Source: Oopsacas minuta
Taxonomy: Eukaryota; Animalia; Porifera
Direction of reading: 5' to 3'
Assembly (NCBI GenBank): GCA_024704765.1
Contig: JAKMXF010000011.1
Coordinates: forward strand, 727,557-791,556
DNA length: 64,000 nucleotides
A program made the position numbers and the translations under genes. How positions within the stretch are numbered: the stretch's first letter is position 1; each line of letters opens with the position of its first letter. Positions 23,947 through 40,432 of this stretch are shown piece by piece. The notes under the pieces were generated by a model. The model saw only the letters and a list, made by a program, of their open reading frames with translations, searched no databases and was not told the DNA's origin.

Positions 23947-24118
23947 CAGTCAACTCGCGTTATATCGATCTCTCTCGGGGTCGTGATAATTTCTTCGATA
24001 TAACCGATGAAAATTATGTTACTTTTACGTTTTGGGGCCATATTTGTACAATTTAATACTTTGATGTTTGAGCGGGCATTTCTATATATCCATGTTCGAT
24101 ATAACGGGGAGTTGACTG
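23947..24118. mobile_element. MITE family A immediately upstream of the tubulin start
   Basis: TA-cagtcaactcgcgttatatcg...ataacggggagttgactg-TA. Confidence 0.88.
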
Positions 24119-24168
24119 TACTTGATTTATTTAGTTATTTTCCAATTATTCCTTTATCACTATACACA

Positions 24169-25545
24169 ATGGCTACACAAGTCACAAGTGAAATTACAGA
24201 TTGTATAGCGTTACATTTTGGGCGTAGCGGGTGTGGATTTGGTGAGAAGTTCTGGGAATTAGCTTGTAAAGAACACGACCTATCGTTATCTACTGGAGAA
24301 GGGAAAAATTTATTTCGTAATTTTCAATCTCTATTTTCTCAAAATGAATCTGGGTTATACAAAGCTAGAGCTTTATTTATTGATCCAGATGGTCAAGATA
24401 TTTCACATTTGAAGAATGGCCGTGTTAAAAATATAACAGACACAGACTTAAACTTTCTAACTGATAAAGAAGATGGATTCGGAAATTTCGCTGCAGGTTA
24501 TTACATTAATAATGCGAATATGCTCAAAGAATTGGATCCCAAACTCAGGAAAATGGTAGAATCTTGCGATAAGACTCCAACCTTCCTAAGCACAGTTTCA
24601 TACAGTGGTGGTTCCGCGGGTGTTTATTGCCGCGTAATGAGTAACATTTTACATGACGAATTCACGAAATCAACGCACATCAACTTCGGGCTATTTCCTT
24701 CACCAATCCTTGGTAGATCAAGCGTAGACTCTTACAATTTTATTCTATCACAAGCTGCCGAAGATTGGGGAAAAAATTCAAATTTCATAAGAGTTATATT
24801 TGATAACGAAGCACTGTATGCTTCAAGTGCACGACATAAGAATACTTTAGATCTAGGCTATGAACATGTAAATCTCGAAGTAGCAAGGGTAATGAGTTTA
24901 TTAACTAGTTCAAATAGATTTAATACTAATCCAACAGCTGACCTGTCTAAAATGATCGTGAAACCTTTGTTAAATTACATTACCCCTTCTTATACACGTA
25001 TGCTTGGGGAAGAGAGTGATACGATCGAGTTTGATACGACTTATCCTCTGTTAATGGAGGGCGGAGCACTTCTAGCTAGTTGTCCTCTCGATAAAGTATT
25101 AGCAGATAGTGTATATACAAGAGGAATTGCACCATCATATTCTTTTCAGGAGAAATTGGAAGCAACTATTAAAAATTCTGAAAATACACTTTTTGAAAAT
25201 ATACATTTTGATCCAAGAGCGATTCCAGTTAGGATGACAGCGTTCGATACATTTGAATTAGGTCGGTTAACTAGTAATAAAGGAGTAATTGAAATGTTGA
25301 AAAGAGAAATGAAAAGATTTGATTTGGCCCATGCCAAACGGGCATTTGTATTTTGGTTTGTTGGTCAGGGAATGGAAGAAGGGGAATTCTCTGAATCGAG
25401 AGAACACATGGAGAAGGTTTATACAGAATATAACGATGGTTGTACTCTGACGTCATCAAGTGAATCTGATAGTGATGATATTAGTAATAATAGTGGAGAT
25501 GAGAATCCACAATTATTAGCTGAAGTTGAGAGTTTAGAAATATAA
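24169..25545 (+). CDS. Highly divergent tubulin (alpha-like C-terminus), intronless
   Basis: CIALHFG..G..FWEL.C.EH, RALFID, KEDG.GNFA.GYY, DNEALY, KRAFVFWFVGQGMEEGEFSESRE. The likely start is ATG 24169; the longer ORF begins inside a MITE. Confidence 0.9.
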   Translation: MATQVTSEITDCIALHFGRSGCGFGEKFWELACKEHDLSLSTGEGKNLFRNFQSLFSQNESGLYKARALFIDPDGQDISHLKNGRVKNITDTDLNFLTDKEDGFGNFAAGYYINNANMLKELDPKLRKMVESCDKTPTFLSTVSYSGGSAGVYCRVMSNILHDEFTKSTHINFGLFPSPILGRSSVDSYNFILSQAAEDWGKNSNFIRVIFDNEALYASSARHKNTLDLGYEHVNLEVARVMSLLTSSNRFNTNPTADLSKMIVKPLLNYITPSYTRMLGEESDTIEFDTTYPLLMEGGALLASCPLDKVLADSVYTRGIAPSYSFQEKLEATIKNSENTLFENIHFDPRAIPVRMTAFDTFELGRLTSNKGVIEMLKREMKRFDLAHAKRAFVFWFVGQGMEEGEFSESREHMEKVYTEYNDGCTLTSSSESDSDDISNNSGDENPQLLAEVESLEI

Positions 25546-25840
25546 TAATAATAATAATAATATATTTTTACAATTATTTATTGGCAAAATTCCGTTATAA
25601 TTATAACATATGGTGTATGCTTCATACTTACCAACAGGCAGCTGTTTATAATATTTGCTGATAATTTCCTGGAATTCCAAGTTTTAGAATTATAAATTGC
25701 AATTACATGCACAGCATTTCGCAACTTTTTCGCTGGATTTCTTGTAAAATAACGTAATAATTCCGCGGCAAGTATGCGATTACGTAATTAATTTAACGTC
25801 ACATTGACTGTATTAATATTCTCAATTTTGTTATTAGAAA

Positions 25841-27893
25841 ATGTTCAATATCTACCTTATTATCACACTGTTAATGCTTCACATTTATAACGTTATGAGT
25901 GTGGAGTATATTCAAGATCAAGCTGTAACAGTGTTTGTCAATAAAGTAGGACCTTACTACAACCCACAAGAGACTTATCATTACTACACACTGCCTGTAT
26001 GTGCGCCGGATAAGATAGAACACAAGTCAATGACCTTAGGGGAAATTCTAGACGGAGATCGCATGGCATTTTCCGATTATATTATCAAATTCAAAGAAGA
26101 CAAGGCTAAAACGAAACTTTGCACTAAACATATAGGTCAAAAGGATTTGGACAAATTTAAAAGTGCAGTAGAAGATTTGTACTATTTCGAATTCGTCGTG
26201 GATGATATTATTTTCAAGGGATTTATTGGGCATTTTGAAGAAGGACCAATATTACCTCATCAGCATAACTTGTATTTATGGAATCATCTACACTTTATAT
26301 TCAGTTATGACGCTGATACACAAAATCATATAGTGAGTGCGCGTGCGATAGCTAGTACTGAGGACCCGGTAAATCTAAATGATCTAACAGCTCCTACTCG
26401 CATTGATTTCTTCTACTCTGTAACATGGCAGGCTGCTAATACACGATATGAGGATAGGGCTAAGCTACAGCTTGATTTCTTTCCCAAGGCTAAGCAGATA
26501 CATTGGATGTCTGTCATTAATTCTACTATATTAGTGCTACTGTTGGTTGTGGTTATGGTAAAGACATTGTATAAGAATCTGAGACAGGATCTCACAAGGT
26601 AATAATTGATGTATTCATAGTATAGTGGATGACTGTTATAAGGACACCCTTATGAGTAGCAAATACATGTTCTTATACCCGGCATGCACTGTATAATCAT
26701 ATCACTGTAGCTCTGTATAGCTCAAGTGAATATCAGGAAACACGATAATTATATATCACCTCAATTTATGTCCATATATGGTAATTGATGATGCTGATTT
26801 ACAAAAGAAAATACCTCTAATTCCGTAAATTTCACACCTTTTTGCTATTTCATAATATTCAAAATTGAATCCATAAATTCATTTTTGTTTGTCTAGTTAC
26901 AACGTAGATAGACCAGACGAAATCATAGAAGATTACGGATGGAAACTGATAAGCGGAGATATATTCAGGTACCCACAACACATGATGTTACTATGCGCTA
27001 TATTAGGCAGTGGTTCACAATTCATTTTGCTAGGACTGACTCTATTATTCTTTGAATCAGCTGGTGTTTTATCACAGAATCATCACGGATCTGTGAATGC
27101 ATTAACCATTCTTCTCTACGCATTTATGTCGTGCTTGTCAGGATTTATATCAAGTGCTTGTTATAAGAAATTTGGTGGTGATTTGTGGTATTGGAATATT
27201 GTGTTAACTTTCGCGATTTTCTTTGTCCCTTTCTTCCTTATATGGTCAATGATAAATTCTGTTGCATGGATGTTTAATTCGACTCAAGCTCTACCAATTT
27301 CGACAATTCTTTTATTATTCTTGCTTTGGTTCATAGTAGGACTGCCTTTGACAATTTTGGGTGGAATTTGTGGTAAGAACATGATGAGTACTTTCCAAGC
27401 ACCATGTCGTACTAAAAAATTCCCCCGTGAGATACCAGCACAGCCTTGGTATAACAAGTCTTGGTTTTACATGCTTGTTGGTGGATTTTTACCTTTCAGC
27501 GCTATTTCAATTGAAATCTACTATATCTACTTGACACTATGGGGAAGACAGTATTTCGCATTATATGGCATTACATTGTTATTATTCGTTATACTTTTGC
27601 TCGTAGCAGCTTGTATCTCAATCACTCTAACATATTTTCAGCTTTCCCTTGAAGATTATCACTGGTGGTGGCGATCTATGTATTCAGTCGGGTCCCTAAG
27701 TTTGTTTGTATTATCCTATGCGTTATACTTCTACTATAAAACTTCTCATATGCATGGGTTTCTACAAGGATTACAGTTCTTTGGTTACACGCTTATTGCT
27801 GCGTATATCTTGTTCCTCATGTTGGCTACTGTATCTTTTATAAGCTCTTTTGCGCTAGTTTATTACATGTACTCAAGACTGAAATTTGAATAG
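25841..27893 (+). CDS. TM9SF1: Transmembrane 9 superfamily member 1, 2 exons
   Basis: Exons 25841-26598 and 26897-27893; VNKVGPYYNPQETYHYY.LPVC, LGEILDGDRM, YGWKLISGDIFRYP, GGFLPFSAI.IE, EDYHWWWRS. Confidence 0.95.
26620..26708. mobile_element. Short pogo-like MITE remnant in TM9SF1 intron
   Basis: tagtggatgactgttataaggacacc...cactgta. Confidence 0.35.
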
Positions 27894-28045
27894 TAGTGTA
27901 TGGTGATTATGTAGCATGTATTTGAACTACTATGATTATTATGCAATTTATTGTATTTATTATTCTGTTCTATTTTGCAGTTTTAAGGATAGATGGAATT
28001 GTCTGAATATTGATGGGCTGTATTTTTGTGGTATATAGAATAGAT

Positions 28046-28132
28046 CAGCGGTTCCAATATGAGGTCCATGAAATTATTGGTGGTCCACGAATGACAGCAG
28101 GGGTCCACGGGCTAAAAGGTTGGGAACCGCTG
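28046..28132. mobile_element. MITE family D
   Basis: cagcggttcc...gggaaccgctg inverted termini; core shared with 40433-40555. Confidence 0.7.
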
Positions 28133-28770
28133 ATGGTCTACTCATCTTGAAAATAAAATAAAATTCCACTCAAATCTTAGGTCATGCTAAAATATGTATT
28201 TAATTTCAGATTACGTAAGATAAAATTGTTAGCATACCCCAATTGACCATATTTACATTCTTTATGTGAGAATAATGACTCATATCCGCTATGATGGTAA
28301 TACTATTCCATAATTACGTAATCCTAATGAAACCTTACAGTATTGACGATTTCACAGTATAAGTGGAATCAACAAGACAGCTGAATGTGATCCCGAAATC
28401 ATGTTATTCCAATTTTTAATTATCACCCACATATTTTGAAAATGGAACTGAAATTAACTTATAAGGAGTCCAATAACAACGTAAATTCTTACCATCGAAA
28501 GTCATAGCGATCAACGTCAATGTACAACCTCACATATCAAATTCAAAATGCTCTCTTCACAATATAATAGGCATTCCTATGTATATGCGAATTAAGGTAT
28601 TATAAGCAATCATATAGCAATCTGATGTATACTGATTTCCTATTGAATTTTACTCATACGCTTTATATTGATTGATTGATATTACATTGAAACTATTTGA
28701 ACGCACACAGCGGGCTTGCATGCACTAGAATACTACTAATTTGATAATTTGATTACGTCATTCTATTTCA

Positions 28771-30762
28771 ATGGAATCTACACCACTTAGAGAGGCAGTG
28801 AGAAAAACTCAACTCGATTTGACCTTGTCAGGGATAAAGTATAATAAGTTTCGTAATTATAATTTTGATCCTGAAACGAATCCAATTTCTACAACAATTC
28901 GCGGTAATAACGCCAAAACTATTCCACGTCCTCTTCAAGCAAAGAAATTACCCGCAATACCTCTAAGGTATCATCAGTCCCTCGAATGCCTTCCTTCTAA
29001 AACGCCCTTGCCTCTCAAAAAGTCGTGTTCCCCCACGATAAACCATGGTACCAGATCCTCATCACTGGAGAGGCAACGTACCAGTATAACAAACCCATTG
29101 CGGAGATCCGGCAGTTTATCAACACTCCCAACAGCTAATTCTCAAGCTGTAGCAATTAGACCGCTGATAGACAATTACGGAGTTGGTCAACCGGAATTGA
29201 AGCTACCACGTACACCGCGAAACGTTACACCTAAACGTAACTCTACTCAATTCGCAGATCCATATACTCAATATTGTGCGATCGGCCTTGGCAGAGCTCA
29301 GTCGACTTTCAAAGCACATCGAGCAGCCATGGGGGCCTTTCAGTCCTCTCCTAAAGGCTCACTTACACCAGTAACTACAAGACATACTCGAATGCCCAAT
29401 ACACAAGAGCAACGTTATCGTATCGCGAAAGAGATCGAAAACACAGAAGCTACTTATGTACAAAATCTACATACTCTGACATCATTTTTCTATCGTCCGC
29501 TTTTGAAAGCTAAACTTATTCCACAAAACGAACTAAAGCAATTATTCCCTCCACAACTAAATGCACTACTCAACTGTCATATTGAGCTACTTGATAAGTT
29601 ACATGATAGACTGTCTAACTCTAAATGGCATGGAATGATTGGGGATCTTTTCGCGAATTTGTGTCCAGGCTCAATGAGTATGGATTTCTTTCAGATGTAT
29701 TCGGGATATGTGTTAGCATTTCCGTCTGCACTCGCAGTTTATGACAAGCAAATACGAACTAATGAGGAATTTCGTGGTTTTATTCGCGCTTGCATGGAAA
29801 GTCCAAGCTGCCGCGGGCTAGATTTATGCGCGTTTCTCCTAACTCCCATACAACGTCTCCCTCGTTATCTTTTGTTATTGAAAGAACTTATAAAATACAC
29901 TGATTCTTCCCACCCAGATTCTTACTTCGCTAATTTAGCTGCAGACAAATTCAAAGCTTGTTTAGTGCTACTGAATGATTCAATACATCTTGTGCTAGAT
30001 ATCGCATCTAAGTCATCTGCATGGCAAAATGAGCCACGGGCGAAAAGTGCAACAAACCGCGGGGGCAAAACATCGAAAAAAGCGAAAAGAAATTCAAAGC
30101 GTGTGTCTGGAATTTCGCATGCTGGCTCAAATTCTGACTTAGAATCAAATAGCAGTAGTTTGTATGTGGAAAGTTGTCCTCCTTCATTCTTCAATAACTT
30201 TTCCAATCATAAAATACAATCACCGATTATCCATGAGAAGCAGAACAGGTCGGCACAGCGTGTACTCAAGCTGGATCCACCCCCAGAGCAATCCTCCGCT
30301 ATGGTTTATACTACCAACACCGAACAAGTCAATACAATTCCGTTAGAAACGCGAAAATTGACACTTCAATTATCAATTGAGGATAAAATACCTTTCTCAT
30401 CACCTCCCTTAACTTCAAACAAATCTCATACAGACTCTGGTATCTACGAAGAAGACCCAGATCTCCCGCAGCCGGACGAAATCCCTGCTTTTCAGCCACA
30501 CACGCCAATCCCTGAACACCCCGGGTATCACCTCCCATCCCTCCCTGATCTTGATATAACCGCGACCCGAAACACTTCTGGACAAGTTGAAAGTTTAACT
30601 AACTGTGCTATGAATAATCTTCTATTAGAATCGCCCGTACAGAGAATTACAGAAATAGGAATAATCAATGAAGCAGATGGTAACGTTAAAAATAAAAAAC
30701 ATATACGAAGAAGATCAGCTGATCGAATATTGCGATTATTCAAGATTTTCAAATCAAAATAG
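28771..30762 (+). CDS. Dbl-homology (RhoGEF) protein, intronless, no PH domain evident
   Basis: RYRIAKEIENTEATYVQNL ... GLDLCAFLLTPIQRLPRYLLLLKELIKYT..HPD, flanked by low-complexity Pro/Ser/Arg regions. Confidence 0.88.
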   Translation: MESTPLREAVRKTQLDLTLSGIKYNKFRNYNFDPETNPISTTIRGNNAKTIPRPLQAKKLPAIPLRYHQSLECLPSKTPLPLKKSCSPTINHGTRSSSLERQRTSITNPLRRSGSLSTLPTANSQAVAIRPLIDNYGVGQPELKLPRTPRNVTPKRNSTQFADPYTQYCAIGLGRAQSTFKAHRAAMGAFQSSPKGSLTPVTTRHTRMPNTQEQRYRIAKEIENTEATYVQNLHTLTSFFYRPLLKAKLIPQNELKQLFPPQLNALLNCHIELLDKLHDRLSNSKWHGMIGDLFANLCPGSMSMDFFQMYSGYVLAFPSALAVYDKQIRTNEEFRGFIRACMESPSCRGLDLCAFLLTPIQRLPRYLLLLKELIKYTDSSHPDSYFANLAADKFKACLVLLNDSIHLVLDIASKSSAWQNEPRAKSATNRGGKTSKKAKRNSKRVSGISHAGSNSDLESNSSSLYVESCPPSFFNNFSNHKIQSPIIHEKQNRSAQRVLKLDPPPEQSSAMVYTTNTEQVNTIPLETRKLTLQLSIEDKIPFSSPPLTSNKSHTDSGIYEEDPDLPQPDEIPAFQPHTPIPEHPGYHLPSLPDLDITATRNTSGQVESLTNCAMNNLLLESPVQRITEIGIINEADGNVKNKKHIRRRSADRILRLFKIFKSK

Positions 30763-32019
30763 AATTATTCTGAATTATTAAACTACAAACCAGGGCGATC
30801 ATTTTGATTTATATTTTCGTTTATTATATCAGTTCCAGAGGGCTGATTCTTGATTGACTCTATCGCATTTATTATCATTGTATATTTTATGATTTATCTC
30901 TCTTTCTCAGGCTATATTATCTGTTATTTTATAAACTTATCTCTATTGAATTTATTTGATTATATATTGTCTACTAATGAAATTTTCTCATAAGGCCATG
31001 TAATATAATCTACTTGTTTCTCATCCTCCCCCGTCCCAAATTTTATCCCCCTTCTGGAAAGATTTTGTATTTTTTCCAAATTTATGCATAATTCTTTGCT
31101 CACAGTGCAATCCACATTTTACTACCTGTGTAGTTAAAAATTCAATATTTTTAAGCCAGAAAGAATGTGATTAGATAATCATAGGATGATTTTATTTCAC
31201 ATATTAACTGGCCTATAAAAAATACAAATAAAATACCGTCCGCCGTCCCAGTTTCTGAAGAAATTCCGGATGAGAAACAAGTAATTAATATTACATGGCC
31301 GAAGTTGTAGGTATTGATAATTATTGGGGTAATGTAGTAGGTGCCACCTGGGATCTTTTCTGATTTTTTAATGATGTAAATGCAAATGATATATTCAATT
31401 AGTTGGAAATATAGCGACACAACACTTTGATGTTTAAAGTTCTAAAATCTAAACGCTAATGTTGGGATGATCAATGTCCAATTAGTAAGTACACAGTGGA
31501 ACTAACTCCGTACACTTAGGTAGTCAGGTCGTCCGATTCTAATTATGGCTAACTTGTGTCTATTAAGTGGTTACCTAGAGGTGGAAATAACAGCCAGGCT
31601 AGTTCCATACTTTTGTATCGGAATAAGAAGTTGGTTAAGTAGGAGGAAGTTATATTTGTTGGAGTGCAACATATTTGCCTGTTAGATGTATGTTTAATTA
31701 TTTATGTGATAGATCCGTTCCTAGTAAAACGAATTTTTCACTTCGTGTAAATCATGTTTCGACTAAAACCTTCCGCGTGTATATTTTATCACCATATTGC
31801 CAACCAATAGACTATACAGCATGCGTTTATATAATTAAAATACTTAGAATTTACATGAAGTGTAAATTCCGCCATGTAATCATGTTGAATAATTGAAAAG
31901 CTTTGATAAATTGCATAGATGGCCAATGAATAATCAATATTGAAAGTGTGGGCCATTTAATCAAACAAGTAGGCAGATTTAAACCACTTCAAAAGGTTAG
32001 ATTTCCTATAATTATAAAG

Positions 32020-33552
32020 ATGAGTGTAGTTAGAAAACGCAGGAACAGTATTCAATCTGAACTCGGAGCAACAAAGGGCTCTAAAAAGCGCAGTTGTATT
32101 TCGCGATTTGAGCAAGATGAATCGTCACAGGAATCTACAATATCAAATACATCAACTGGTAAATATGATAGGAATCTCATTGTAAATGATCCAATCCATG
32201 GTCATATAGAATTACACCCTGTACTAGTCGCGATTATGGACACCCCACAATTTCAACGCTTACGATATATCCGACAATTAGGCCTCACCTATTTCGTATT
32301 CCCGGGAGCAATGCATACGAGATTTGAACATAGTATCGGCGTGAGTCATTTAACAAGACAACTATTAATGAATATATCCCAAAAACAACCATATTTGGGC
32401 ATAACAGAACTCGATATTCTATGTTGCGAAATAGCTGGTTTGTGTCATGATTTGGGACATGGTTGTTTCTCGCATTTCTACGAAAAATTCCTTTCATTCG
32501 CAGATCAAAGAGGCTGGAAACACGAAAATATGTCAACAGAAATGCTTGACTATCTCATACAGGAAAATAATTTAATGGAAATATTCAATGAATACGGTTT
32601 AAACGAGAACGATATAAGCTTCGTTAAGGAAATGATTTCAAATAAACCTCTTGGCGATTCAACTAACGAATGGCCTTATATAGGTCGAGATAAAGAGAAA
32701 TCATTTCTCTATGATATCGTTGCGAATAAACTAACTGGTATGGACGTAGATAAATGGGACTATATCGAGAGAGATGCATATTACCTTGGCATACCGAATA
32801 CATTCGATTCTTCACGTTTGATGAAGTTTATGAGAGTGATTGAAGTTGATGGAGTACTACAGATTTGCTTGAGAGATAAAGAGCTTAATAACGTGTATGA
32901 AATGTACGCTACACGTTCGAAATTATTCCGTAGCGCTTATTTACATAAAACAGTGAATGGTATAGAGCTTATGTTATGTGATGCGTTAATAATCGCAGAT
33001 TCTTATTTGAAATTCCCAACTGATACGAATAGGTTTGTGACATTGTCAGAGGCATCGAAGGATTTAACCGCGTTTAGTTTAGTTAACGACTCGATTCTGC
33101 ACGCAATTATGTTATCGCCTGACCCAAACTTAGATGAAGCGAAAAGTATCATTAATAGGATAATGAAACGTGAATTGTATCCTCTAATCGGGAAAATGTA
33201 TTTAGTTGAGAAAATGGTGAAAAGTGACGTAGAAATTACCAAAGAAATATGTTCATACCAATCACAACTCAATGAGTTGGAAAAACCGTTGTTACCAGAG
33301 GATTTGAAAATAGAATCATTAATGATCCATTTCGGTATGAAACAAAAAAACCCGATTGATAAACTGTATTTTTTCTCCAAATCAGACATCAATAAAGCAT
33401 TTCTTATACCCAAATCTGAATTGAGTTATATGTTGCCTTCCAATTTCGGTGAATATATATTTCGTGTATATTGCAGACGAAATGAAACGGTCTATATCAA
33501 CAGAGCAAAGGATTGCTTCAGGTTATGGAAAGAAAAATCAAGCGTCAGTTGA
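32020..33552 (+). CDS. SAMHD1: SAMHD1-like dNTP triphosphohydrolase, copy A (no SAM domain), intronless
   Basis: NDPIHGHIELHP, DTPQFQRLRYI.QLG, HTRFEHS.GV, AGLCHDLGHG.FSH, KSFLYDIVANK, DVDKWDY, NPID, RVYC. Likely ATG at 32020 (MSVVRKRR). Confidence 0.95.
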   Translation: MSVVRKRRNSIQSELGATKGSKKRSCISRFEQDESSQESTISNTSTGKYDRNLIVNDPIHGHIELHPVLVAIMDTPQFQRLRYIRQLGLTYFVFPGAMHTRFEHSIGVSHLTRQLLMNISQKQPYLGITELDILCCEIAGLCHDLGHGCFSHFYEKFLSFADQRGWKHENMSTEMLDYLIQENNLMEIFNEYGLNENDISFVKEMISNKPLGDSTNEWPYIGRDKEKSFLYDIVANKLTGMDVDKWDYIERDAYYLGIPNTFDSSRLMKFMRVIEVDGVLQICLRDKELNNVYEMYATRSKLFRSAYLHKTVNGIELMLCDALIIADSYLKFPTDTNRFVTLSEASKDLTAFSLVNDSILHAIMLSPDPNLDEAKSIINRIMKRELYPLIGKMYLVEKMVKSDVEITKEICSYQSQLNELEKPLLPEDLKIESLMIHFGMKQKNPIDKLYFFSKSDINKAFLIPKSELSYMLPSNFGEYIFRVYCRRNETVYINRAKDCFRLWKEKSSVS

Positions 33553-33758
33553 AGAAGAATATTATTAAGTATTATTTATAAGTGTTTGTCGTGTGTCTCA
33601 TTACAGTGTATCCATACTCTTTTTATCCCCTATTATGTGTATAACACATACTATTAAAAGATTGTAACATTAATATTTGATAAGAAATTCTACAAAAGTC
33701 AAAATGTAACCTCAACAAAGCTTAGCAATTAAACTCAAACTCAATAAAATAGTTTTAA

Positions 33759-33888
33759 TTAATTTAGGAATCTTTGTGGGGAAGCTAAATGTCCAATAAA
33801 TCTTATTAAAATCTGTCTCAGATAGATAACTATTGCTGCTCCATCGTCTATTAAACCTATAGGCCCCAAAATAGCTTCAGGGAGAATA
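33759..33888 (-). pseudogene. Truncated 3' fragment of RNF170 carried along by the duplication
   Basis: Near-identical to 36387-36516 (last about 43 codons: ILPEAILGPIGLIDD...RFLN*), with no upstream part. Confidence 0.85.
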
Positions 33889-33892
33889 CAAT

Positions 33893-36523
33893 TGATTGAT
33901 ATTTTCATTTATTATATCAGTTCCAGAGGGCTGATTTTGATTGACTCTATCGCATTTATTATCATTGTATATTTTATGATTTCTCTCTCTTTCTCAGGCT
34001 ATATTATCTGTTATTTTATAAACTTATCTCTATTGAATTTATTTGATTATATATTGTCACTAATGAAATTTTCACACAAGTTGTAGCTATTGATAATTAT
34101 TGGGGTAATGTAGCCGTGCCAACCTGGGGTCCACCAACGACTGCAGGGTATTTTCTAAGTTTTTAATGATGTAAATGCAAATGGTATATTCAATTAGTTG
34201 GAAATATAACGACACAACACTTTGATGTTTAAAGTTCCAAATTCTAAACACTATTGCTGGGATCATCAATGTCCAATTAGTAAGTACATAGTGGAACTTA
34301 CAACCTACACTTAGGTAGTCACGTCGTCCGATTCTAACTATGGCTAACTCGTGTCTATTAAGTGGTTACCTAGAGGTGGAAATAACATCCAGGTTATAGT
34401 TCAATACTTATATTACCAACTAATGGACTACACTGTAGCTGTAGGCGTTTATATAATTAAAATACTTAGAATTTACATGGGACATAGTATGATTGGGCAA
34501 TCGCATGATGAATTGAATAGCTTTTATAATTTGCATAGATGGCCTTTAACTAATCAATATTGAAAGTGTGGACACTTCATAGAATTAGCTAGGCAGGTTT
34601 AAACCACTTCCAAAGGTTAGATTTCCTATAAATATCAACAAAAACATACTAAATAATGTTAATTATAAAGATGAGCATTCAATCTGAATTCGGAGCAACA
34701 AAGGGCTCTAAAAAGCCGAGTTGTATTTCGAGATTTGAGCAAGATGAATCGTCACAGGAATCTACAATATCAAATACATCAACTGGTAAATATGGTAGGA
34801 ATCTCATTGTAATTGATCCAATCCATGGTCATATAGAATTACACCCTGTACTAGTCGCGATTATGGACACCCCACAATTTCAACGCTTACGATATATCCG
34901 ACAATTAGGCACCACTTATTTCGTATTCCCGGGAGGAATTCATACGAGATTTGAACATAGTATCGGCGTGAGTCATTTAACAAGACAACTATTAATGAAT
35001 ATATCCCAAAAGCAACCATGTTTGGGCATAACAGAACTCGATATTCTATGTTGCGAAATAGCTGGTTTGTGTCATGATTTGGGACATGGTTTTTTCTCGC
35101 ATCTCTACGAACATTTCCTTTCATTCACAGATCAAAGAGGCTGGAAACACGAAAATATGTCAACAGAAATGCTTGACTATCTCATACGGGAAAATAATTT
35201 AATGGAAATATTCAATAAATACCATTTAAACGAGAACGATATAAGCTTCGTTAAGGAAATGATTTCAAATAAACCTGGTGGCGATTTAACTAACGAATGG
35301 CCTTATATAGGTAGAGGTAAAGAGAAATCATTTCTCTATGATATCGTTGCGAATAAAGGAACTGGTATGGACGTAGATAAATGGGACTATATCGAGAGAG
35401 ATGCATATTACCTTGGCGTACCGAATTCATTCGATTCTTCACGTTTGATGAAGTTTATGAGAGTGATTGAAGTTGATGGAGTACTACAGATTTGCTTGAG
35501 AGATAAAGCGCTTAATGACGTGTATGAAATGTACGCTACACGTGCGAAATTATCCCGCAACGCTTATTTCCATAAAACAGTGAAAGGTATAGAGCTTATG
35601 TTATGTGATGCGTTCGTACTCGCAGATCCTTATTTGAAAATCCCAACAGCTGATACGAATAGGTTTGTGACATTGTCAGGGGCATCGAAGGATCCAATCG
35701 CGTTTAGTTTAGTTAACGACTCGATTCTGCACGCAATTATGTTATCGCCTGACCCAAACTTAGATGAAGCGAAAAGTATCATTAATAGGATAATGAAACG
35801 TGAATTGTATCCTCTAATCGGGAAAATGTATTTAGTTAATAAAATGGTGAAAAGTGACGTAGAAATTACCAAAGAAATATGTTCATACCAATCACAACTC
35901 AATATTGAGTTGGAAAAACCGTTGTTACCAGAGGATTTGAAAATAGAATCATTAATGATCCATTTCGGTATGAAACAAAAAAACCCGATTGATAAACTGT
36001 ATTTTTTCTCCAAATCAGACATCAATAAAGCATTTCTTATACCCAAATCTGAATTGAGTTATATGTTGCCTTCCAATTTCGGTGAATATATATTTCGTGT
36101 ATATTGCAGACGAAATGAAACGGTCTATATCAACAGAGCAAAGGATTGCTTCAGGTTATGGAAAGAAAAATCAAGCGTCAGTTGAAGAAGAATATTATTA
36201 AGTATTATTTATAAGTGTTTGTCGTGTGTCTCATTACAGTGTATCCATACTCTTTTTATCCCCTATTATTAACACATACTATTAAAAGATTGTAACATTA
36301 ATATTTGATAAGAAATTCTACAAAAGTCAAAATGTAACCTCAACAAAGCTTAGCAATTAAACTCAAACTCAATAAAATAGTTTTAATTAATTTAGGAATC
36401 TTTGTGGGGAAGCTAAATGTCCAATAAATCTTATTAAAATCTGCCTCAGATAGATAACTATTGCTGCTCCATCGTCTATTAAACCTATAGGCCCCAAAAT
36501 AGCTTCAGGGAGAATATCAATTG
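33893..36523. repeat. Tandem segmental duplication, unit 2 (about 2.6 kb)
   Basis: See unit 1; upstream indels make this unit shorter. Confidence 0.92.
34671..36185 (+). CDS. SAMHD1: SAMHD1-like dNTP triphosphohydrolase, copy B (no SAM domain), intronless
   Basis: Same motifs as copy A with an intact frame; likely ATG at 34671 (MSIQSE), ORF track start 34656. Confidence 0.95.
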   Translation: MSIQSEFGATKGSKKPSCISRFEQDESSQESTISNTSTGKYGRNLIVIDPIHGHIELHPVLVAIMDTPQFQRLRYIRQLGTTYFVFPGGIHTRFEHSIGVSHLTRQLLMNISQKQPCLGITELDILCCEIAGLCHDLGHGFFSHLYEHFLSFTDQRGWKHENMSTEMLDYLIRENNLMEIFNKYHLNENDISFVKEMISNKPGGDLTNEWPYIGRGKEKSFLYDIVANKGTGMDVDKWDYIERDAYYLGVPNSFDSSRLMKFMRVIEVDGVLQICLRDKALNDVYEMYATRAKLSRNAYFHKTVKGIELMLCDAFVLADPYLKIPTADTNRFVTLSGASKDPIAFSLVNDSILHAIMLSPDPNLDEAKSIINRIMKRELYPLIGKMYLVNKMVKSDVEITKEICSYQSQLNIELEKPLLPEDLKIESLMIHFGMKQKNPIDKLYFFSKSDINKAFLIPKSELSYMLPSNFGEYIFRVYCRRNETVYINRAKDCFRLWKEKSSVS

Positions 36524-37109
36524 GAGAAATTACATAAGCAATTAACACAAGTGTGTACATTAATACAGATATTTTAATGTCACGGGGTAGTAGGCTGAAT
36601 GAATTCCAAATGTAGCTTACTATCGCTATGGAATCTTGTGAATAGAATCTTGTCCAATTGGCTAAATAATTCGTTTGGGAGAATTTACTGTTATAATCTT
36701 GAATTTGGCATAAAATTATCCTATTTTCTCTATTTAAGCCATTTTGACTATAGCACGTTAATAGAAATGATATTTCGCTTCGGCAACAAGGACATGAAGC
36801 AGGATTGTTCGTTCCTTTAGATCGCCACCATCCTATAATACAATCACTACAGTACTTGTGGTTACAATTAGTTTGTATGGGAAGTTCTATCGGCTCTGTA
36901 TGACATATAGGACATTCTTTGTTGAATCCTGCGGAATGGTTTTCTTGGATTTGTACTTGTGGGAAGTTCAGGAGATATCCTACCTTGTTTATTATCTTTA
37001 TGATCAATGCTTTTATACCGTATAGATATATAAATGCGAAACAAATACAAGGAAAGCATATTGTGAATAAGAGGCAAGTTGGGAGTATTGCCAAAGCTGC
37101 CAATTCCAT
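36387..37109 (-). CDS. RNF170: RING E3 ligase RNF170 homologue, intronless
   Basis: N-terminal TM, C3HC4 RING (CPIC..NCNHKYCSDC..CPCCR) and C-terminal YVISPIDILPEAILGPIGLIDD. Confidence 0.88.
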   Translation of the reverse strand: MELAALAILPTCLLFTICFPCICFAFIYLYGIKALIIKIINKVGYLLNFPQVQIQENHSAGFNKECPICHTEPIELPIQTNCNHKYCSDCIIGWWRSKGTNNPASCPCCRSEISFLLTCYSQNGLNRENRIILCQIQDYNSKFSQTNYLANWTRFYSQDSIAIVSYIWNSFSLLPRDIKISVLMYTLVLIAYVISPIDILPEAILGPIGLIDDGAAIVIYLRQILIRFIGHLASPQRFLN

Positions 37110-37150
37110 TATATTAATACAAAGCTAACGTAAATAATAAAATGATAATA

Positions 37151-37331
37151 CAGTCAATTCTTGTCGTATTGAAGCTCAAGAGACCGATGAGTTCGATATG
37201 ACAGATGAAATTTATGTTTCTTTGACGGTTTTTGGCCATATTTGTACAATTTCATACTTTAATATAAGCGGGATTTAGATATATCCGTGTTCGATATAAC
37301 TGGGCTTGATAGATATAACGGGAAATTACTG
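37151..37331. mobile_element. MITE family A
   Basis: TA-cagtcaattc..gaagctcaag..catatttgtacaattt..tccgtgttcgatataac. Confidence 0.8.
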
Positions 37332-37537
37332 AATCATACATACTAACCTCTTTTACAAATTTCCTGGATGTACAATATTTGATGTGAAATCCAGGAAGGA
37401 TGCAGAAATAAACAACAAACAACAATAAAGAAAATTTTAATAAATAAATTTGAAATATAAAGTAATAAACATATAAACTAACGCGGGAAACTGTTGGAGT
37501 TAAGTGTCCATGTAAATAAGTGATACAAATGAAATAT

Positions 37538-39739
37538 CTAAAGAAATGAGCTGAGTTGGAAAACTTGGATAATAGAATTTAGCTTGTCACAAACCATTAT
37601 AATATTGTCATCACGTGACACTATATCTGAAGGTTGGTCTTTCCCATTGCGGATTATTTTCGTTAAACACACTTTATCTTTCGTAAAAAGCGCAATTGTT
37701 TCAGTATTATTCAACAATATCTCTCCTGAGTTAGAAACCACAATTTTTAACGGTGAAATGAATTCCTGATCCTCAGTAAAACTAGCAAAAGTCGCGAGAA
37801 AATTTCCATATAAATCATAAATATTAATACAAGGATTCCCCATATGCAGTATAACAAGCTGTCCATCGTTACTAACTGCTACATCAACAGGGAATTTAAG
37901 TGACCCTACTTCTTCCGATTGAGCTCCGATCATTTGTTTAAAATACAAATCATCGCTGTATAAATGCACCCTATGATTATGATAATCTGCTATAAAAAGA
38001 TTGCCGTCTTTCGAAGTAGCTAAGCCGCCAAAACCTCCAAAATTGAACTTCCTATCTTTACTAGCATCATCTCCAAGATCTTGGAAGTGTTGGCCACTCG
38101 GGCTGAACACACGCACTGTATTTTGATTCTGTATTAACAAAAATATAAATGAATTACTAATTGCCATACTATTTATTATAAGCAATTCCTCAGCGCCTCT
38201 ACGAACACTAAATGTTTTTATTAAGTCACCTCTTGCATCTAGCCGTCTCACTGATCGATTACAACCATCATACACTAGGATGTTATTATTCTCTTTCGAT
38301 ACTGCCATGCAGCAAGGTTTGAATTTAGTTAAACCGAGTGAAGCTGCGGTTATTGTCACCTCAGGTTGTGGTATTTTCTTAAACACAATTCTACCAACAT
38401 TTTCTAATAGATACGATGTATGTGAGTCAATAATTGCATCCAATTCAGGCTCATTTTCACTCAAAGATCCATTTTGTGTCGCGAATTCTATGATTTGTCT
38501 CAATCTATTTTCTAAACACGGCAATAATGATGTAATGGATGAGCTTAATTGGCTGTTACAATGTAATGTACATGTTGTAGACAGATTGCTCAATGAATTG
38601 ACATTTAGCTGTAAGTCTATTTCAACTTTATTCAATCTATCTATTTCTGCTTCATAAAACGAATCTATTTTCTCAACTAAAATTTGCTTGCGTTTTTCGA
38701 GAATTTGAACTAAACCATCAAACATGCTTTCTATATGGAACTTTTTCGTGTTTCTCACGTTTTCAATGTTTTGTATTTTTTCTGGTAAACATTCTAAAAT
38801 CCTTGCTAAATCTTCTGACTGTAGTTTGGCTTGTTTTTGAAAAGAAGATAGTGTATTATGTGCTTCTCCTAGTGCCTCGCTTATATTGCGAATACTCTCA
38901 CATCTCTGATGGGGCGGTACACAAGCTTCACATAACACTGTTTGACATGAGTTACAATAGCTGGTAGCTAATTCTGTGGGATGGTAGGAACATGATGGTG
39001 TTGAGCTGAGAGAAAGGAGAGATGGAAGATCCATAGTGATTATCTGTAGAGAAGATGAGATGAATAATTTCTATGTATTTTCTAACCGAGGAGGGGCCGA
39101 ATATTGAAAAAATATTTTCCAAAATTTAATAATTTTAGTATGAAAGATAGGCAAAACAGACAGTACATACAAAAATAATCGTCCCTACGAAGGGGGTCTG
39201 CCACGATCTGCGAACTTTGTTAAAAACTCAACAATTATGGGAGACAAAATTCTTACCTCTTGAGTAGAAATAAGTTTATGAGAACTACAATGTCTCTTGT
39301 GAGCTTTTGCATCAATCTTACACATAACAAAGTTACACTGAGTACAATACTGTGTTGCTATATCAGGTTCATCCAGGAGACAGTCTTGACAGAGAGGGGG
39401 AGGGAGAGGAGGAGCGTGATTTGGGGGACCTGTTACATTCTCATTATTTTTGAGAGGAGATTTTGGGTTTTGTAAAATTGCGGAGTCTTTAATTGTAGAT
39501 AATTTTGAGAGAATATCTGATAATTCATTCGTGGGAAGTTTGTCTATTCCCTCTTTTGGAATTCCTGTAACTGATTTACAAAGCGGACATGTGTATTCAT
39601 GTTTGGAATCAGGTTTTATGCAGGAACCGCAAAATGTATGTAAACAAGTGAGAAATTTCGGTTGCTTATAGTTTGAATTACACATTGTGCATTTAACGAA
39701 TGAATCCAGAAGCGTCAAATCGAGTTGCTTGGGATTCAT
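37538..39739 (-). CDS. TRIM-NHL E3 ligase (RING, two B-boxes, coiled coil, NHL repeats), 2 exons
   Basis: Exons 39739-39257 and 39043-37538; RING CTMC..CLHTFCGSC..CPLC, B-box1 CQDC..CTQC..C..H..H, B-box2 CSYH..C..C..C..H; NHL motifs FIADYHNHRV and FPVDVAV. Confidence 0.88.
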
Positions 39740-40432
39740 GCCAAATTTCACAGGTATGTGAGTCGTTTATATATATTTATACTTTCGCGAAGTTTATAGA
39801 GAAGATAGCCTATTATTTAATTTATACAAAATATATTAGTTGAATGAACTGCCAAAAAAGCCATAATTACATAGGAAATCACTTTGGACAGATTGCGATC
39901 ATTTCTAATGAGATTCTTAATAGGAAATTACACCTGGGCTTCTATCTGTAAGGTTTTAACCATCAAATTACGTTGTATTTTCATATGAATAATGTGATTA
40001 TGAAATGAGGGTCTTATGGCTTGTGTGCAAAAAGTAACATAGAAATCGTAGTTAAGTTTAAATCATATACAACAAATAGGTTTGGCGCCATGGGGGCGAG
40101 GGGCGAACCCAGATAAAGGCCTGTTTGATTGGTAATGGTTTGAATATCATAAAAAGTATGTATTTATGTGCAGATGTACAAAATATGCAAGAGATGAGAA
40201 TTTATTGAGTATTATAATATTTTGTTCTTGAATGTACTCAATTACTTACATGTTACACTCGTAATGAATCGGAATATTTATCTTTAGCGCTATGTTTTAC
40301 ATATTTTCCACTTTTTTGAACTCCAAAAATTTCAATTTTTTCAGCAAATCTGTTCATTTCAAAATGTAAATGGTTCGTGCATATAGAAAATTAGTAAAGC
40401 TGCTTCGGTAATTCAGGGGTGATCTTATAGAC

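What the first reader, a model, noticed from the sequence alone, without database searches (positions are those of the whole stretch)
32020..36185. Tandem SAMHD1 paralogues diverging almost only by amino-acid-changing substitutions, several at ligand-contact positions
Seen: a manual alignment of the two intact ORFs gives about 37 amino-acid replacements and two one-codon insertions but only about 5-6 synonymous differences. The replacements cluster in the HD domain; the last about 280 nt are identical. Established: human SAMHD1 is a dNTPase and antiviral restriction factor; the metal and catalytic residues H167, H206, D207, D311, H215, H233, R164, Y315, R366 and Y374 are retained in both copies. 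Differences (copy A/copy B, human numbering by eye) fall on or beside known substrate-pocket or allosteric residues: N119 N/I, G152 L/T, P212 C/F, M216 F/L, E355 E/A, N358 N/D, H370 F/S, R372 S/N, Q375 L/F, N380 N/K. Inference: positive selection after a recent duplication, giving two nucleotide triphosphohydrolases of different substrate or activator specificity, possibly a diversifying nucleotide-depletion antiviral system in an early-branching animal. Co-assembly into mixed tetramers is also conceivable.
Basis: partly seen in the sequence, partly recalled or inferred. Interest (0 to 1): 0.85.

Follow-up and report, generated by a model that had tools for sequence, protein, structure and literature searches.

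The report
Fast-evolving duplicate of a sponge SAMHD1 gene
A glass sponge has a recent side-by-side duplicate of its dNTP-degrading enzyme gene (SAMHD1 type); one copy stayed conservative and the other changed about 30 amino acids, several in the enzyme's regulatory pocket, but adaptive evolution is only moderately supported.

Summary
Two intact single-exon SAMHD1-type genes lie in a true tandem duplication in Oopsacas minuta: copy A 32020-33552, copy B 34671-36185. They differ at 37 replaced codons, 7 synonymous codons and 3 in-frame indels.

- The divergence is one-sided: at least 24 changes are derived in B and 3 in A. Five other glass sponges have one syntenic, strongly constrained copy (omega 0.08).
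- The last 342 nt of the CDS plus 340 nt of 3' flank are near-identical, which points to gene conversion.
- B lost a conserved N-terminal basic motif.

Evidence that dN/dS exceeds 1 is mixed.
- Pairwise dN/dS is 1.1-1.8 (not significant).
- The free branch test gives omega 1.8, p=0.14 against 1.
- The branch-site test is strongly significant, but only because of 8 double-hit codons. An MNM-aware version gives p=0.002.
- Assuming equal neutral time for both copies gives omega_B 3.3, p=0.002-0.02.

B is not a decaying pseudogene. It has no frameshift or stop, while the flanks are full of indels, and conserved sites are half as likely to change.

B alone replaces N119 and E355, which are 99-100% conserved across animals. 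Replacements cluster in helix alpha13, which links the allosteric site to the catalytic site.

Most likely B is a rewired paralogue. Relaxed constraint remains a serious rival. Another note of this scan (s1-293709) covers the same stretch.

The parts
30804..33893 (+). Tandem duplication unit 1: upstream intergenic DNA, copy A, 3' flank and a fragment of the RING gene's 3' end.
   Evidence: blastn of the two halves. The junction at about 33890 was read.
33892..36523 (+). Tandem duplication unit 2: upstream DNA, copy B and 3' flank. Its right end lies inside the real RING/DUF1232 gene.
   Evidence: The RING ORF is at 36387-37109 on the minus strand.
32020..33552 (+). Copy A, 510 aa. A SAM-less SAMHD1-type HD-domain dNTPase, the conservative copy equivalent to the single orthologue of other glass sponges.
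   Evidence: ORF. Pfam HD. PDB SAMHD1 E=1e-127 to 1e-131. Only 3 derived replacements. Branch length 0.008.
34671..36185 (+). Copy B, 504 aa. Intact ORF and the fast-evolving copy, with at least 24 derived replacements.
   Evidence: Branch length 0.10.
32023..32046 (+). Eight codons (VVRKRRN-type basic motif, NLS-like) present in A and all five orthologues and deleted in B. B also has R24P in the second basic cluster.
Evidence: Alignments.
34812..34814 (+). Copy B codon 48, Ile at the position of human N119. Its side chain reads the base in allosteric site 2.
   Evidence: N in 99% of 113 animal homologues and in all orthologues. PMC7045340.
35508..35510 (+). Copy B codon 280, Ala at the position of human E355, the salt-bridge partner of R333 in allosteric site 2.
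   Evidence: E in 100% of 113 homologues. PMC7045340 and bioRxiv 10.1101/2023.03.30.534755.
35499..35570 (+). Copy B equivalent of helix alpha13 (human 352-375). Six of its 24 residues differ from A. In copy A the same helix is at 32872-32943.
   Evidence: table. Hypergeometric P=0.018. Scan statistic for human 355-399, P=0.016.
33211..33888 (+). Near-identical tract of unit 1 (partner at 35841-36516 in unit 2): the last 114 codons plus the 3' flank. Inferred to be a gene-conversion tract.
   Evidence: 1 mismatch in about 680 nt, against 4.4% in the rest of the CDS and 8.6% upstream.
33757..33894 (-). Duplicated fragment of the RING/DUF1232 gene's 3' end (about 45 codons). It marks the right breakpoint of the duplication.
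30994..31300 (.). MITE-like insertion of about 305 bp with 33-nt terminal inverted repeats. It lies upstream of copy A and is absent upstream of copy B.

Best explanation
The locus. In the glass sponge Oopsacas minuta a segment of about 3 kb was duplicated in tandem. It runs from just downstream of a RhoGEF gene into the 3' end of a RING gene, and it carries the single-exon, SAM-less SAMHD1-type dNTP triphosphohydrolase gene.

Copy A. Copy A kept the ancestral sequence and presumably the ancestral job: GTP/dNTP-activated tetrameric dNTPase, nuclear.

Copy B. Copy B is kept as an open gene but has taken on about 30 derived replacements at a rate at or above the synonymous rate.
- It keeps every metal, catalytic and allosteric-site-1 residue.
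- It replaces N119, E355 and N358-type residues of allosteric site 2.
- It changes 6 of 24 residues of helix alpha13, the helix that couples activator binding, the dimer-dimer interface and the base pocket.
- It changes residues beside the catalytic histidines (positions 212 and 216).
- It has lost the conserved N-terminal basic (NLS-like) motif.

Most likely mechanism. B is a paralogue being rewired under positive selection. It would be a dNTPase, or a partner subunit of A, with altered activator or tetramerisation requirements and probably a different location in the cell.

Gene conversion. Conversion keeps the C-terminal lobe and 3' flank of the two copies identical.

What is shown and what is inferred.
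- Shown: the duplication, the asymmetry, the raised omega, maintenance of the ORF, and which residues changed.
- Inferred: positive selection, altered allostery, changed localisation, and any hetero-oligomer.
For: Real duplication, specific to this lineage.
- There are clean breakpoints, a duplicated fragment of the RING gene, and no Ns.
- All five other glass-sponge assemblies have one copy in the same RhoGEF / HD / RING-DUF1232 / B-box-NHL context.

Asymmetry.
- Branch lengths are 0.008 (A) and 0.10 (B).
- 20 replacements are clearly B-derived and 4 probably so, against 3 A-derived.

Raised omega.
- omega after duplication is 1.8, against a background of 0.08. The one-ratio model is rejected with 2dlnL=80.
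- With equal neutral time for both paralogues, omega_B is 3.3 and omega_A is 0.32: p=0.002. Without double-hit codons p=0.02; with a multi-nucleotide-mutation parameter p=0.011.
- The MNM-aware branch-site test gives 2dlnL=9.8, p=0.002.

B is still constrained.
- The CDS has only 3 indels, all in frame. The upstream non-coding DNA has about 20 indels per 740 aligned nt, mostly not multiples of 3. Expected indels in a neutral B are 5-15.
- P(no stop codon after 47 random substitutions) = 0.11.
- Sites invariant in the orthologues changed half as often as variable sites: 15/222 against 23/168, p=0.025.

Where the changes fall.
- 3 of 4 named AL2 residues differ, or 4 of 5 with E355: P=0.003 and 0.0003, post hoc.
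- Residue roles come from PMC8177086, PMC7045340 and 10.1101/296624.
- The scan-corrected cluster at human 355-399 has P=0.016.
- Adjacent double substitutions are in excess in the CDS (7 observed, 2.2 expected, P=0.005) but not in the best-aligned non-coding block.
Against: - Everything rests on only 7 synonymous differences in one genome.
- Pairwise dN/dS is 1.1-1.8 and not significant.
- The unconstrained branch test of omega>1 gives p=0.14.
- The branch-site signal vanishes (2dlnL=1.2) when the 8 double-hit codons are removed, which is the known multi-nucleotide-mutation pitfall.
- Measured against upstream non-coding divergence (8.6% total), B's dN is about equal to the neutral rate. The oddity is then the low dS, which needs gene conversion or a younger CDS to explain it.
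- 5 of the 7 synonymous differences sit next to replaced codons (P=0.004). This hints at clustered mutation or patchy conversion rather than site-by-site selection.
- The pocket enrichment tests are post hoc, and positions 358, 372, 375 and 380 are not human-like in any glass sponge.
- The pair was picked out of a very large scan because it looked extreme (winner's curse).
- There is no expression evidence for B.
Confidence: 0.5

Rival explanations
1. Relaxed constraint. After duplication B became redundant and is drifting at or near the neutral rate. It is young enough that no stop or frameshift has hit yet, and the pocket changes are loss-of-function damage to the allosteric site rather than adaptation.
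For: - omega is not significantly above 1 in the pairwise and free branch tests.
- Without double-hit codons the best branch-site fit puts 98% of sites at omega about 1-1.6.
- B replaces residues conserved in 99-100% of animal SAMHD1s (N119, E355).
- The equivalent E-to-L change in Arabidopsis VEN4 gives a strong mutant phenotype (10.1101/2023.03.30.534755).
- dN of B is about equal to the per-lineage non-coding divergence.
Against: - No frameshifting indel, despite 5-15 expected from flank indel rates.
- No stop codon (P=0.11).
- Conserved sites are hit half as often (p=0.025).
- With partial constraint the mean omega should be below 1, yet it is 1.8-3.3.
- The equal-time test rejects omega_B=1 (p=0.002-0.02).

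Confidence: 0.33
2. Conversion plus a selective sieve, a variant of the adaptive reading. The duplication is as old as the 8.6% upstream divergence. Repeated gene conversion keeps erasing neutral differences in the CDS, and selection preserves short unconverted islands that carry B's functional replacements. That would give low dS with high dN.
For: - Divergence is a mosaic: 8.6% upstream, 4.4% in the 5' CDS, 0.15% in the 3' 680 nt.
- Synonymous differences sit next to replaced codons (5 of 7, P=0.004).
- A MITE inserted upstream of A after the duplication, which suggests appreciable age.
Against: It cannot be told apart from a post-conversion burst with one genome. Islands only one or two codons wide would require very short conversion tracts.
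Confidence: 0.12
3. Assembly artefact: two divergent alleles, or sequences from two individuals, laid down in tandem.
For: Tissue from a wild population was used, and one near-identical 680-nt tract is shared.
Against: - The junction joins a RING-gene fragment to the post-RhoGEF spacer with no gap or N. Such a join needs reads that span a true tandem junction in a graph assembler.
- The flanks differ by 8.6% plus indels of 305 nt and about 200 nt.
- The source paper expects low heterozygosity in this isolated cave population (PMC10280926).
- Both genes are annotated on a 1.01-Mb contig.
Confidence: 0.05

Closest known systems
Human/vertebrate SAMHD1 (dNTP triphosphohydrolase; PDB 4bzc, 7ujn and others)
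   Same: There is 43-48% identity over human residues 113-572 (E about 1e-121 to 1e-131). The HD metal site, the catalytic residues, allosteric site 1 (D137, Q142, R145) and most triphosphate-binding residues of allosteric site 2 are conserved in both copies.
   Different: There is no SAM domain in either copy or in any glass-sponge orthologue, and the genes are single-exon. Glass sponges have F, S/N and L at human H370, R372 and Q375. Copy B additionally lacks N119, E355 and N358 and the N-terminal basic motif.
Primate SAMHD1 evolving under positive selection in the arms race with lentiviral Vpx/Vpr (from my own knowledge, not checked here)
   Same: Raised dN/dS in a dNTPase with an antiviral role.
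   Different: In primates the selected sites lie on antagonist-binding surfaces at the N- and C-termini and the signal recurs across lineages. Here the orthologues are strongly constrained (omega 0.08), only one new paralogue is accelerated, and the changes sit in the allosteric and alpha13 module. No virus link is known.
Arabidopsis VENOSA4 and fungal RiSAMHD1 (non-animal SAMHD1 homologues)
   Same: They are SAM-less SAMHD1-type enzymes with naturally varied AL2 residues (Ri: Q16 for N119, D229 for R352; PMC12042053). The VEN4 E249L allele hits the E355 equivalent (10.1101/2023.03.30.534755).
   Different: Those are single, conserved housekeeping genes, not a recently diverged tandem pair.
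Asymmetrically evolving young tandem duplicates with 3' gene conversion (general class)
   Same: One conservative copy, one accelerated copy, and mosaic identity caused by conversion.
   Different: Nothing differs in kind. This is a new example in a dNTPase of a glass sponge.

Membership tests
SAMHD1-type dNTP triphosphohydrolase | HD metal-binding quartet (H167, H206, D207, D311) and catalytic residues (R164, H210, H215, H233, K312, Y315, R366, Y374) | tested here: met
   All are present in A and B in the HMMER alignments to human SAMHD1 chains. None is among the 37 differing sites.
SAMHD1-type dNTP triphosphohydrolase | Full-length homology to the SAMHD1 catalytic core | tested here: met
   A: E=1e-127 to 4e-131 over human 113-572. 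B: E about 1e-121 to 8e-127. The top database hits are annotated SAMHD1.
SAMHD1-type dNTP triphosphohydrolase | N-terminal SAM domain | tested here: not met
   Pfam finds only HD in both copies. The five glass-sponge orthologues also list only PF01966. Many non-vertebrate homologues lack SAM too.
SAMHD1-type dNTP triphosphohydrolase | Guanine-specific allosteric site 1 (D137, Q142, R145) | tested here: met
   Conserved in both copies in the alignment. Residue set taken from PMC8177086.
SAMHD1-type dNTP triphosphohydrolase | dNTP-specific allosteric site 2 (N119, D330, N358, R372; E355-R333 salt bridge) | tested here: inconclusive
   Copy A has N119, D330, N358, E355 and R333 but S at position 372. 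Copy B keeps only D330 and R333 (I119, A355, D358, N372). R352, K354, H376, K377, V156 and F157 are kept in both. So the feature is mostly met for A and not met for B.
SAMHD1-type dNTP triphosphohydrolase | Nucleotide-activated tetramer with dNTPase activity | not testable with these tools
   Needs biochemistry.
Gene under positive (arms-race) selection | dN/dS significantly above 1 | tested here: inconclusive
   Free branch test p=0.14 and pairwise not significant. Equal-time test p=0.002-0.02 and MNM-aware branch-site test p=0.002. The signal is lost without the double-hit codons.
Gene under positive (arms-race) selection | Recurrent acceleration across lineages | tested here: not met
   Background omega across the five orthologues is 0.05-0.08.
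Unprocessed pseudogene | Frameshifts, stops or loss of constraint at conserved sites | tested here: not met
   The ORF is intact and its indels are in frame, while the flanks are indel-rich. Conserved sites are depleted for change (p=0.025).

The most novel reading that the evidence does not exclude
Copy B is an expressed SAMHD1 paralogue that stays out of the nucleus and has a rebuilt second allosteric site. It either responds to a different activator, or it co-assembles with copy A through the identical C-terminal lobe as a regulatory subunit. It was shaped by positive selection, possibly by a viral or nucleotide-pool pressure. That would be a two-component SAMHD1 system in one of the earliest-branching animal lineages.
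Probability: 0.25. Interest if true: 0.65.

Novelty: new member of a known kind. Interest (0 to 1): 0.4.

Why it matters
SAMHD1 links dNTP homeostasis to antiviral defence, and its allosteric logic is well studied in humans but hardly at all outside vertebrates. Here is a natural, very young pair in which one copy keeps the canonical regulatory pocket. The other copy replaces two otherwise invariant pocket residues (N119, E355) and remodels the coupling helix, while keeping the catalytic site. That makes a ready-made comparison for how activator specificity and tetramerisation can evolve. If B is expressed and active, it would show neofunctionalisation of a nucleotide-depleting enzyme in a sponge. 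If not, it is a textbook case of an early-stage redundant duplicate, and a caution about reading replacement-to-silent ratios by eye.

Tried and rejected
- Donor paralogue. I considered that B's differences were copied from an older third paralogue or a divergent lineage. I rejected this because B's states are almost all unique (absent from the orthologues and from 113 animal homologues), and there is no third copy in the window (tblastn).
- Deaminase or editing-type hypermutation. The spectrum is mixed, with transitions about equal to transversions. There is a non-significant weak-to-strong excess of 14:6 among B-derived changes (my reading of the and tables).
- Promoter footprinting. Aligning the 250 nt upstream of A, B and the five orthologues showed them too diverged to say anything.
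- Expression evidence. Exact-protein look-ups in public assemblies, including run-level assemblies, returned only the genome contig for A and B and nothing for the longer B ORF.
- Literature. A search for one-letter residue names (Q375, N380, H370) found nothing. Three-letter names found the review used here.
- Branch-site posteriors. The naive posteriors simply flag every replaced site, so they do not help rank sites.
- 3-D distances. The replaced residues could not be mapped in 3-D because the tools give no coordinates. I used residue lists from the literature instead.
- ML run. A first codon-model run timed out and was rewritten with eigen-decomposition.


Full report
WHAT IS THERE

The window comes from Oopsacas minuta (Hexactinellida), assembly GCA_024704765.1, contig JAKMXF010000011.1. 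Two intact single-exon ORFs are present.
- Copy A is at 32020-33552 (510 aa).
- Copy B is at 34671-36185 (504 aa).
- Both hit Pfam HD only.
- Both align to human SAMHD1 structures over residues 113-572, at E about 1e-121 to 1e-131.
- There is no SAM domain in either copy, nor in any glass-sponge orthologue.

THE DUPLICATION

blastn of the two halves shows a clean head-to-tail duplication. Unit 1 is 30804-33893 and unit 2 is 33892-36523.
- The left breakpoint lies about 40 nt after the stop of the RhoGEF gene.
- The right breakpoint lies inside the 3' end of the RING/DUF1232 gene. Unit 1 therefore ends with a copy of about 137 nt of that gene's last codons, at 33757-33894.
- The window has no Ns.
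- The source paper describes a SPAdes hybrid Illumina plus PacBio assembly of an isolated cave population expected to have low heterozygosity (PMC10280926).
- The upstream parts of the two units differ by 8.6% mismatches and about 20 indels. These include a 305-bp MITE-like insertion with 33-nt inverted ends, found only upstream of A.

I therefore treat the duplication as real. The mis-assembled-alleles rival gets about 5%.

ORTHOLOGUES

The five closest database proteins are 63-78% identical. Each sits on a long contig of another glass-sponge assembly, as a single copy in the same gene order: tubulin, EMP70, RhoGEF, HD, RING/DUF1232, B-box-NHL, DnaJ, F-box/WD40. The duplication is therefore specific to the O. 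minuta lineage.

CHECKING THE COUNTS

The codon alignment gives 37 replaced codons, 7 synonymous codons, an 8-codon indel at the N-terminus and two one-codon indels.

Divergence is a mosaic.
- Upstream non-coding DNA: 8.6%.
- First 1,190 nt of the CDS: 4.4%.
- From 33211 to 33888 (last 342 nt of the CDS plus the 3' flank): one mismatch only.

That last tract is best read as recent gene conversion.

- On a codon tree the A branch is 0.008 and the B branch is 0.10 substitutions per codon.
- Polarising with the five orthologues gives 20 clearly B-derived replacements and 4 probable ones, against 3 A-derived and 11 ambiguous.
- A is in effect the unchanged orthologue, and B is the copy that moved.

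IS dN/dS ABOVE 1?

I wrote a Goldman-Yang F3x4 likelihood for the 7-taxon tree.

Branch models.
- Background omega is 0.08.
- omega on the two post-duplication branches is 1.82.
- The one-ratio model is rejected massively (2dlnL=80).
- omega=1 on those branches is not rejected (2dlnL=2.15, p=0.14).

Pairwise estimates.
- They range from 1.13 (YN00) to 1.85 (LWL85).
- Fisher tests on site counts are not significant.

Branch-site model A.
- It is highly significant: 2dlnL=24 on all codons and 20.7 on the 383 unconverted codons.
- It drops to 2dlnL=1.2 once the 8 codons with two differences are removed.
- This is the known sensitivity of the test to multi-nucleotide changes.
- Adding a double-substitution rate parameter leaves 2dlnL=9.8, p=0.002.

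Equal neutral time. The two copies are neighbours of the same age, so I also forced equal neutral time on both branches.
- omega_A is 0.32 and omega_B is 3.3.
- omega_B=1 is rejected at p=0.002.
- Without double hits p=0.02. With the double-substitution parameter p=0.011.

All of these tests rest on 7 synonymous differences. The pair was also picked out of a very large scan because it looked extreme. I count this as moderate evidence, not as proof.

IS B DECAYING?

No.
- The CDS has only three indels, all multiples of three.
- The aligned upstream DNA has about 0.3 indels per mismatch, mostly not multiples of three.
- At that ratio a neutral B would carry about 14 indels. Even at a conservative 0.1 indels per substitution it would carry about 5.
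- The chance of no stop codon after 47 random substitutions is 0.11.
- Sites invariant in the five orthologues changed in 15 of 222 cases, against 23 of 168 variable sites (odds ratio 0.46, p=0.025).

So B still feels purifying selection. A gene that is partly constrained yet averages omega of 1.8-3.3 must have a subset of sites evolving faster than neutral. This is the main argument for adaptation.

CAVEATS FROM THE PATTERN OF DIFFERENCES

- Mismatches in the CDS are clustered. There are 7 adjacent pairs against 2.2 expected (P=0.005). The best-aligned non-coding block shows no such excess.
- Five of the seven synonymous differences lie next to a replaced codon (P=0.004).
- This fits three readings: clustered mutation, patchy conversion with selection keeping small islands, or selection for two-step amino-acid changes. 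Examples of the last are two separate CT-to-GG changes giving Leu-to-Gly.
- Measured against flank divergence, B's dN is about neutral. The anomaly is then the low dS, and any scenario needs conversion of the CDS to explain it.

WHERE THE CHANGES FALL

Reviews define allosteric site 2 as N119, D330, N358 and R372, with the E355-R333 salt bridge stabilising the activator. They describe helix alpha13 (352-375) as the link between this site, the dimer-dimer interface (N358, D361, H364, R372) and the catalytic-site residues R366 and Q375. L150, Y374, Q375, N380 and D383 line the base pocket (PMC8177086; PMC7045340; 10.1101/296624; 10.1101/2023.03.30.534755).
- A and B differ at 119, 355, 358, 372, 375 and 380.
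- Three of the four named AL2 residues differ (P=0.003), or four of five with E355 (P=0.0003).
- Six of the 24 alpha13 residues differ (P=0.018).
- A scan statistic places 12 of the 37 replacements in human 355-399 (P=0.016, also after stratifying by conservation).
- These tests are post hoc, and positions 358, 372, 375 and 380 are not human-like in any glass sponge.
- N119I and E355A are B-derived at positions held by N in 99% and E in 100% of 113 animal homologues.
- B also changes residues flanking the catalytic histidines (212 C to F, 216 F to L) that are invariant in the other sponges.
- At the N-terminus B has lost eight codons carrying a basic motif conserved in A and all orthologues, and has R24P in the second basic cluster. 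Another note of this scan on the same stretch makes the same point (s1-293709). In human SAMHD1 an N-terminal basic motif is the nuclear localisation signal (my own knowledge). A change of compartment for B is an inference.

VERDICT

The feature is a genuine, young, lineage-specific tandem duplicate of a known enzyme family, with strongly asymmetric evolution.
- Most likely reading (about 0.5, plus about 0.1 for the conversion-sieve variant): B is a functional paralogue being rewired at its regulatory module, and probably relocated.
- Main rival (about 0.33): relaxed constraint on the way to loss.
- The antiviral 'diversifying system' idea is untested, and the constrained orthologues do not suggest it.

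This is a new member of a known kind, of moderate interest. It becomes worth more if expression and a distinct activity of B are shown.

Noticed in passing
window 30994-31300: A MITE-like element of about 305 bp with 33-nt terminal inverted repeats (91% complementary). It is inserted upstream of copy A and absent from the matching place upstream of copy B, so it inserted after the duplication.
   Followed up: partly
window 33757-33894: An orphan duplicate of the last ~45 codons of the RING/DUF1232 gene, left between the two SAMHD1 copies by the duplication breakpoint.
   Followed up: yes
window 24000-40000; loci L001-L005: The gene order tubulin, EMP70, RhoGEF, HD, RING/DUF1232, B-box-NHL, DnaJ, F-box/WD40, SH3-SH2 adaptor is conserved across six glass-sponge assemblies. 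The SAMHD1-type gene is single-exon and SAM-less in all of them, unlike the multi-exon SAM-bearing vertebrate gene.
   Followed up: partly
window 34671-35840 (copy B, diverged part): Two independent Leu-to-Gly replacements arose by the same tandem CT-to-GG change (CTT to GGT, CTA to GGA). B-derived changes also show a weak-to-strong excess (about 14:6, not significant). This may be a mutational signature or biased conversion.
   Followed up: no
window 33272 and 33637-33641: The otherwise identical 3' tract contains a 3-nt indel in the CDS and a 5-nt indel in the flank. Either these arose after the conversion or they are consensus errors of the hybrid assembly.
   Followed up: no
L005 10149-11635: The most distant orthologous locus has an extra small DUF1232 ORF next to the RING/DUF1232 gene, which suggests a local duplication there too.
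   Followed up: no
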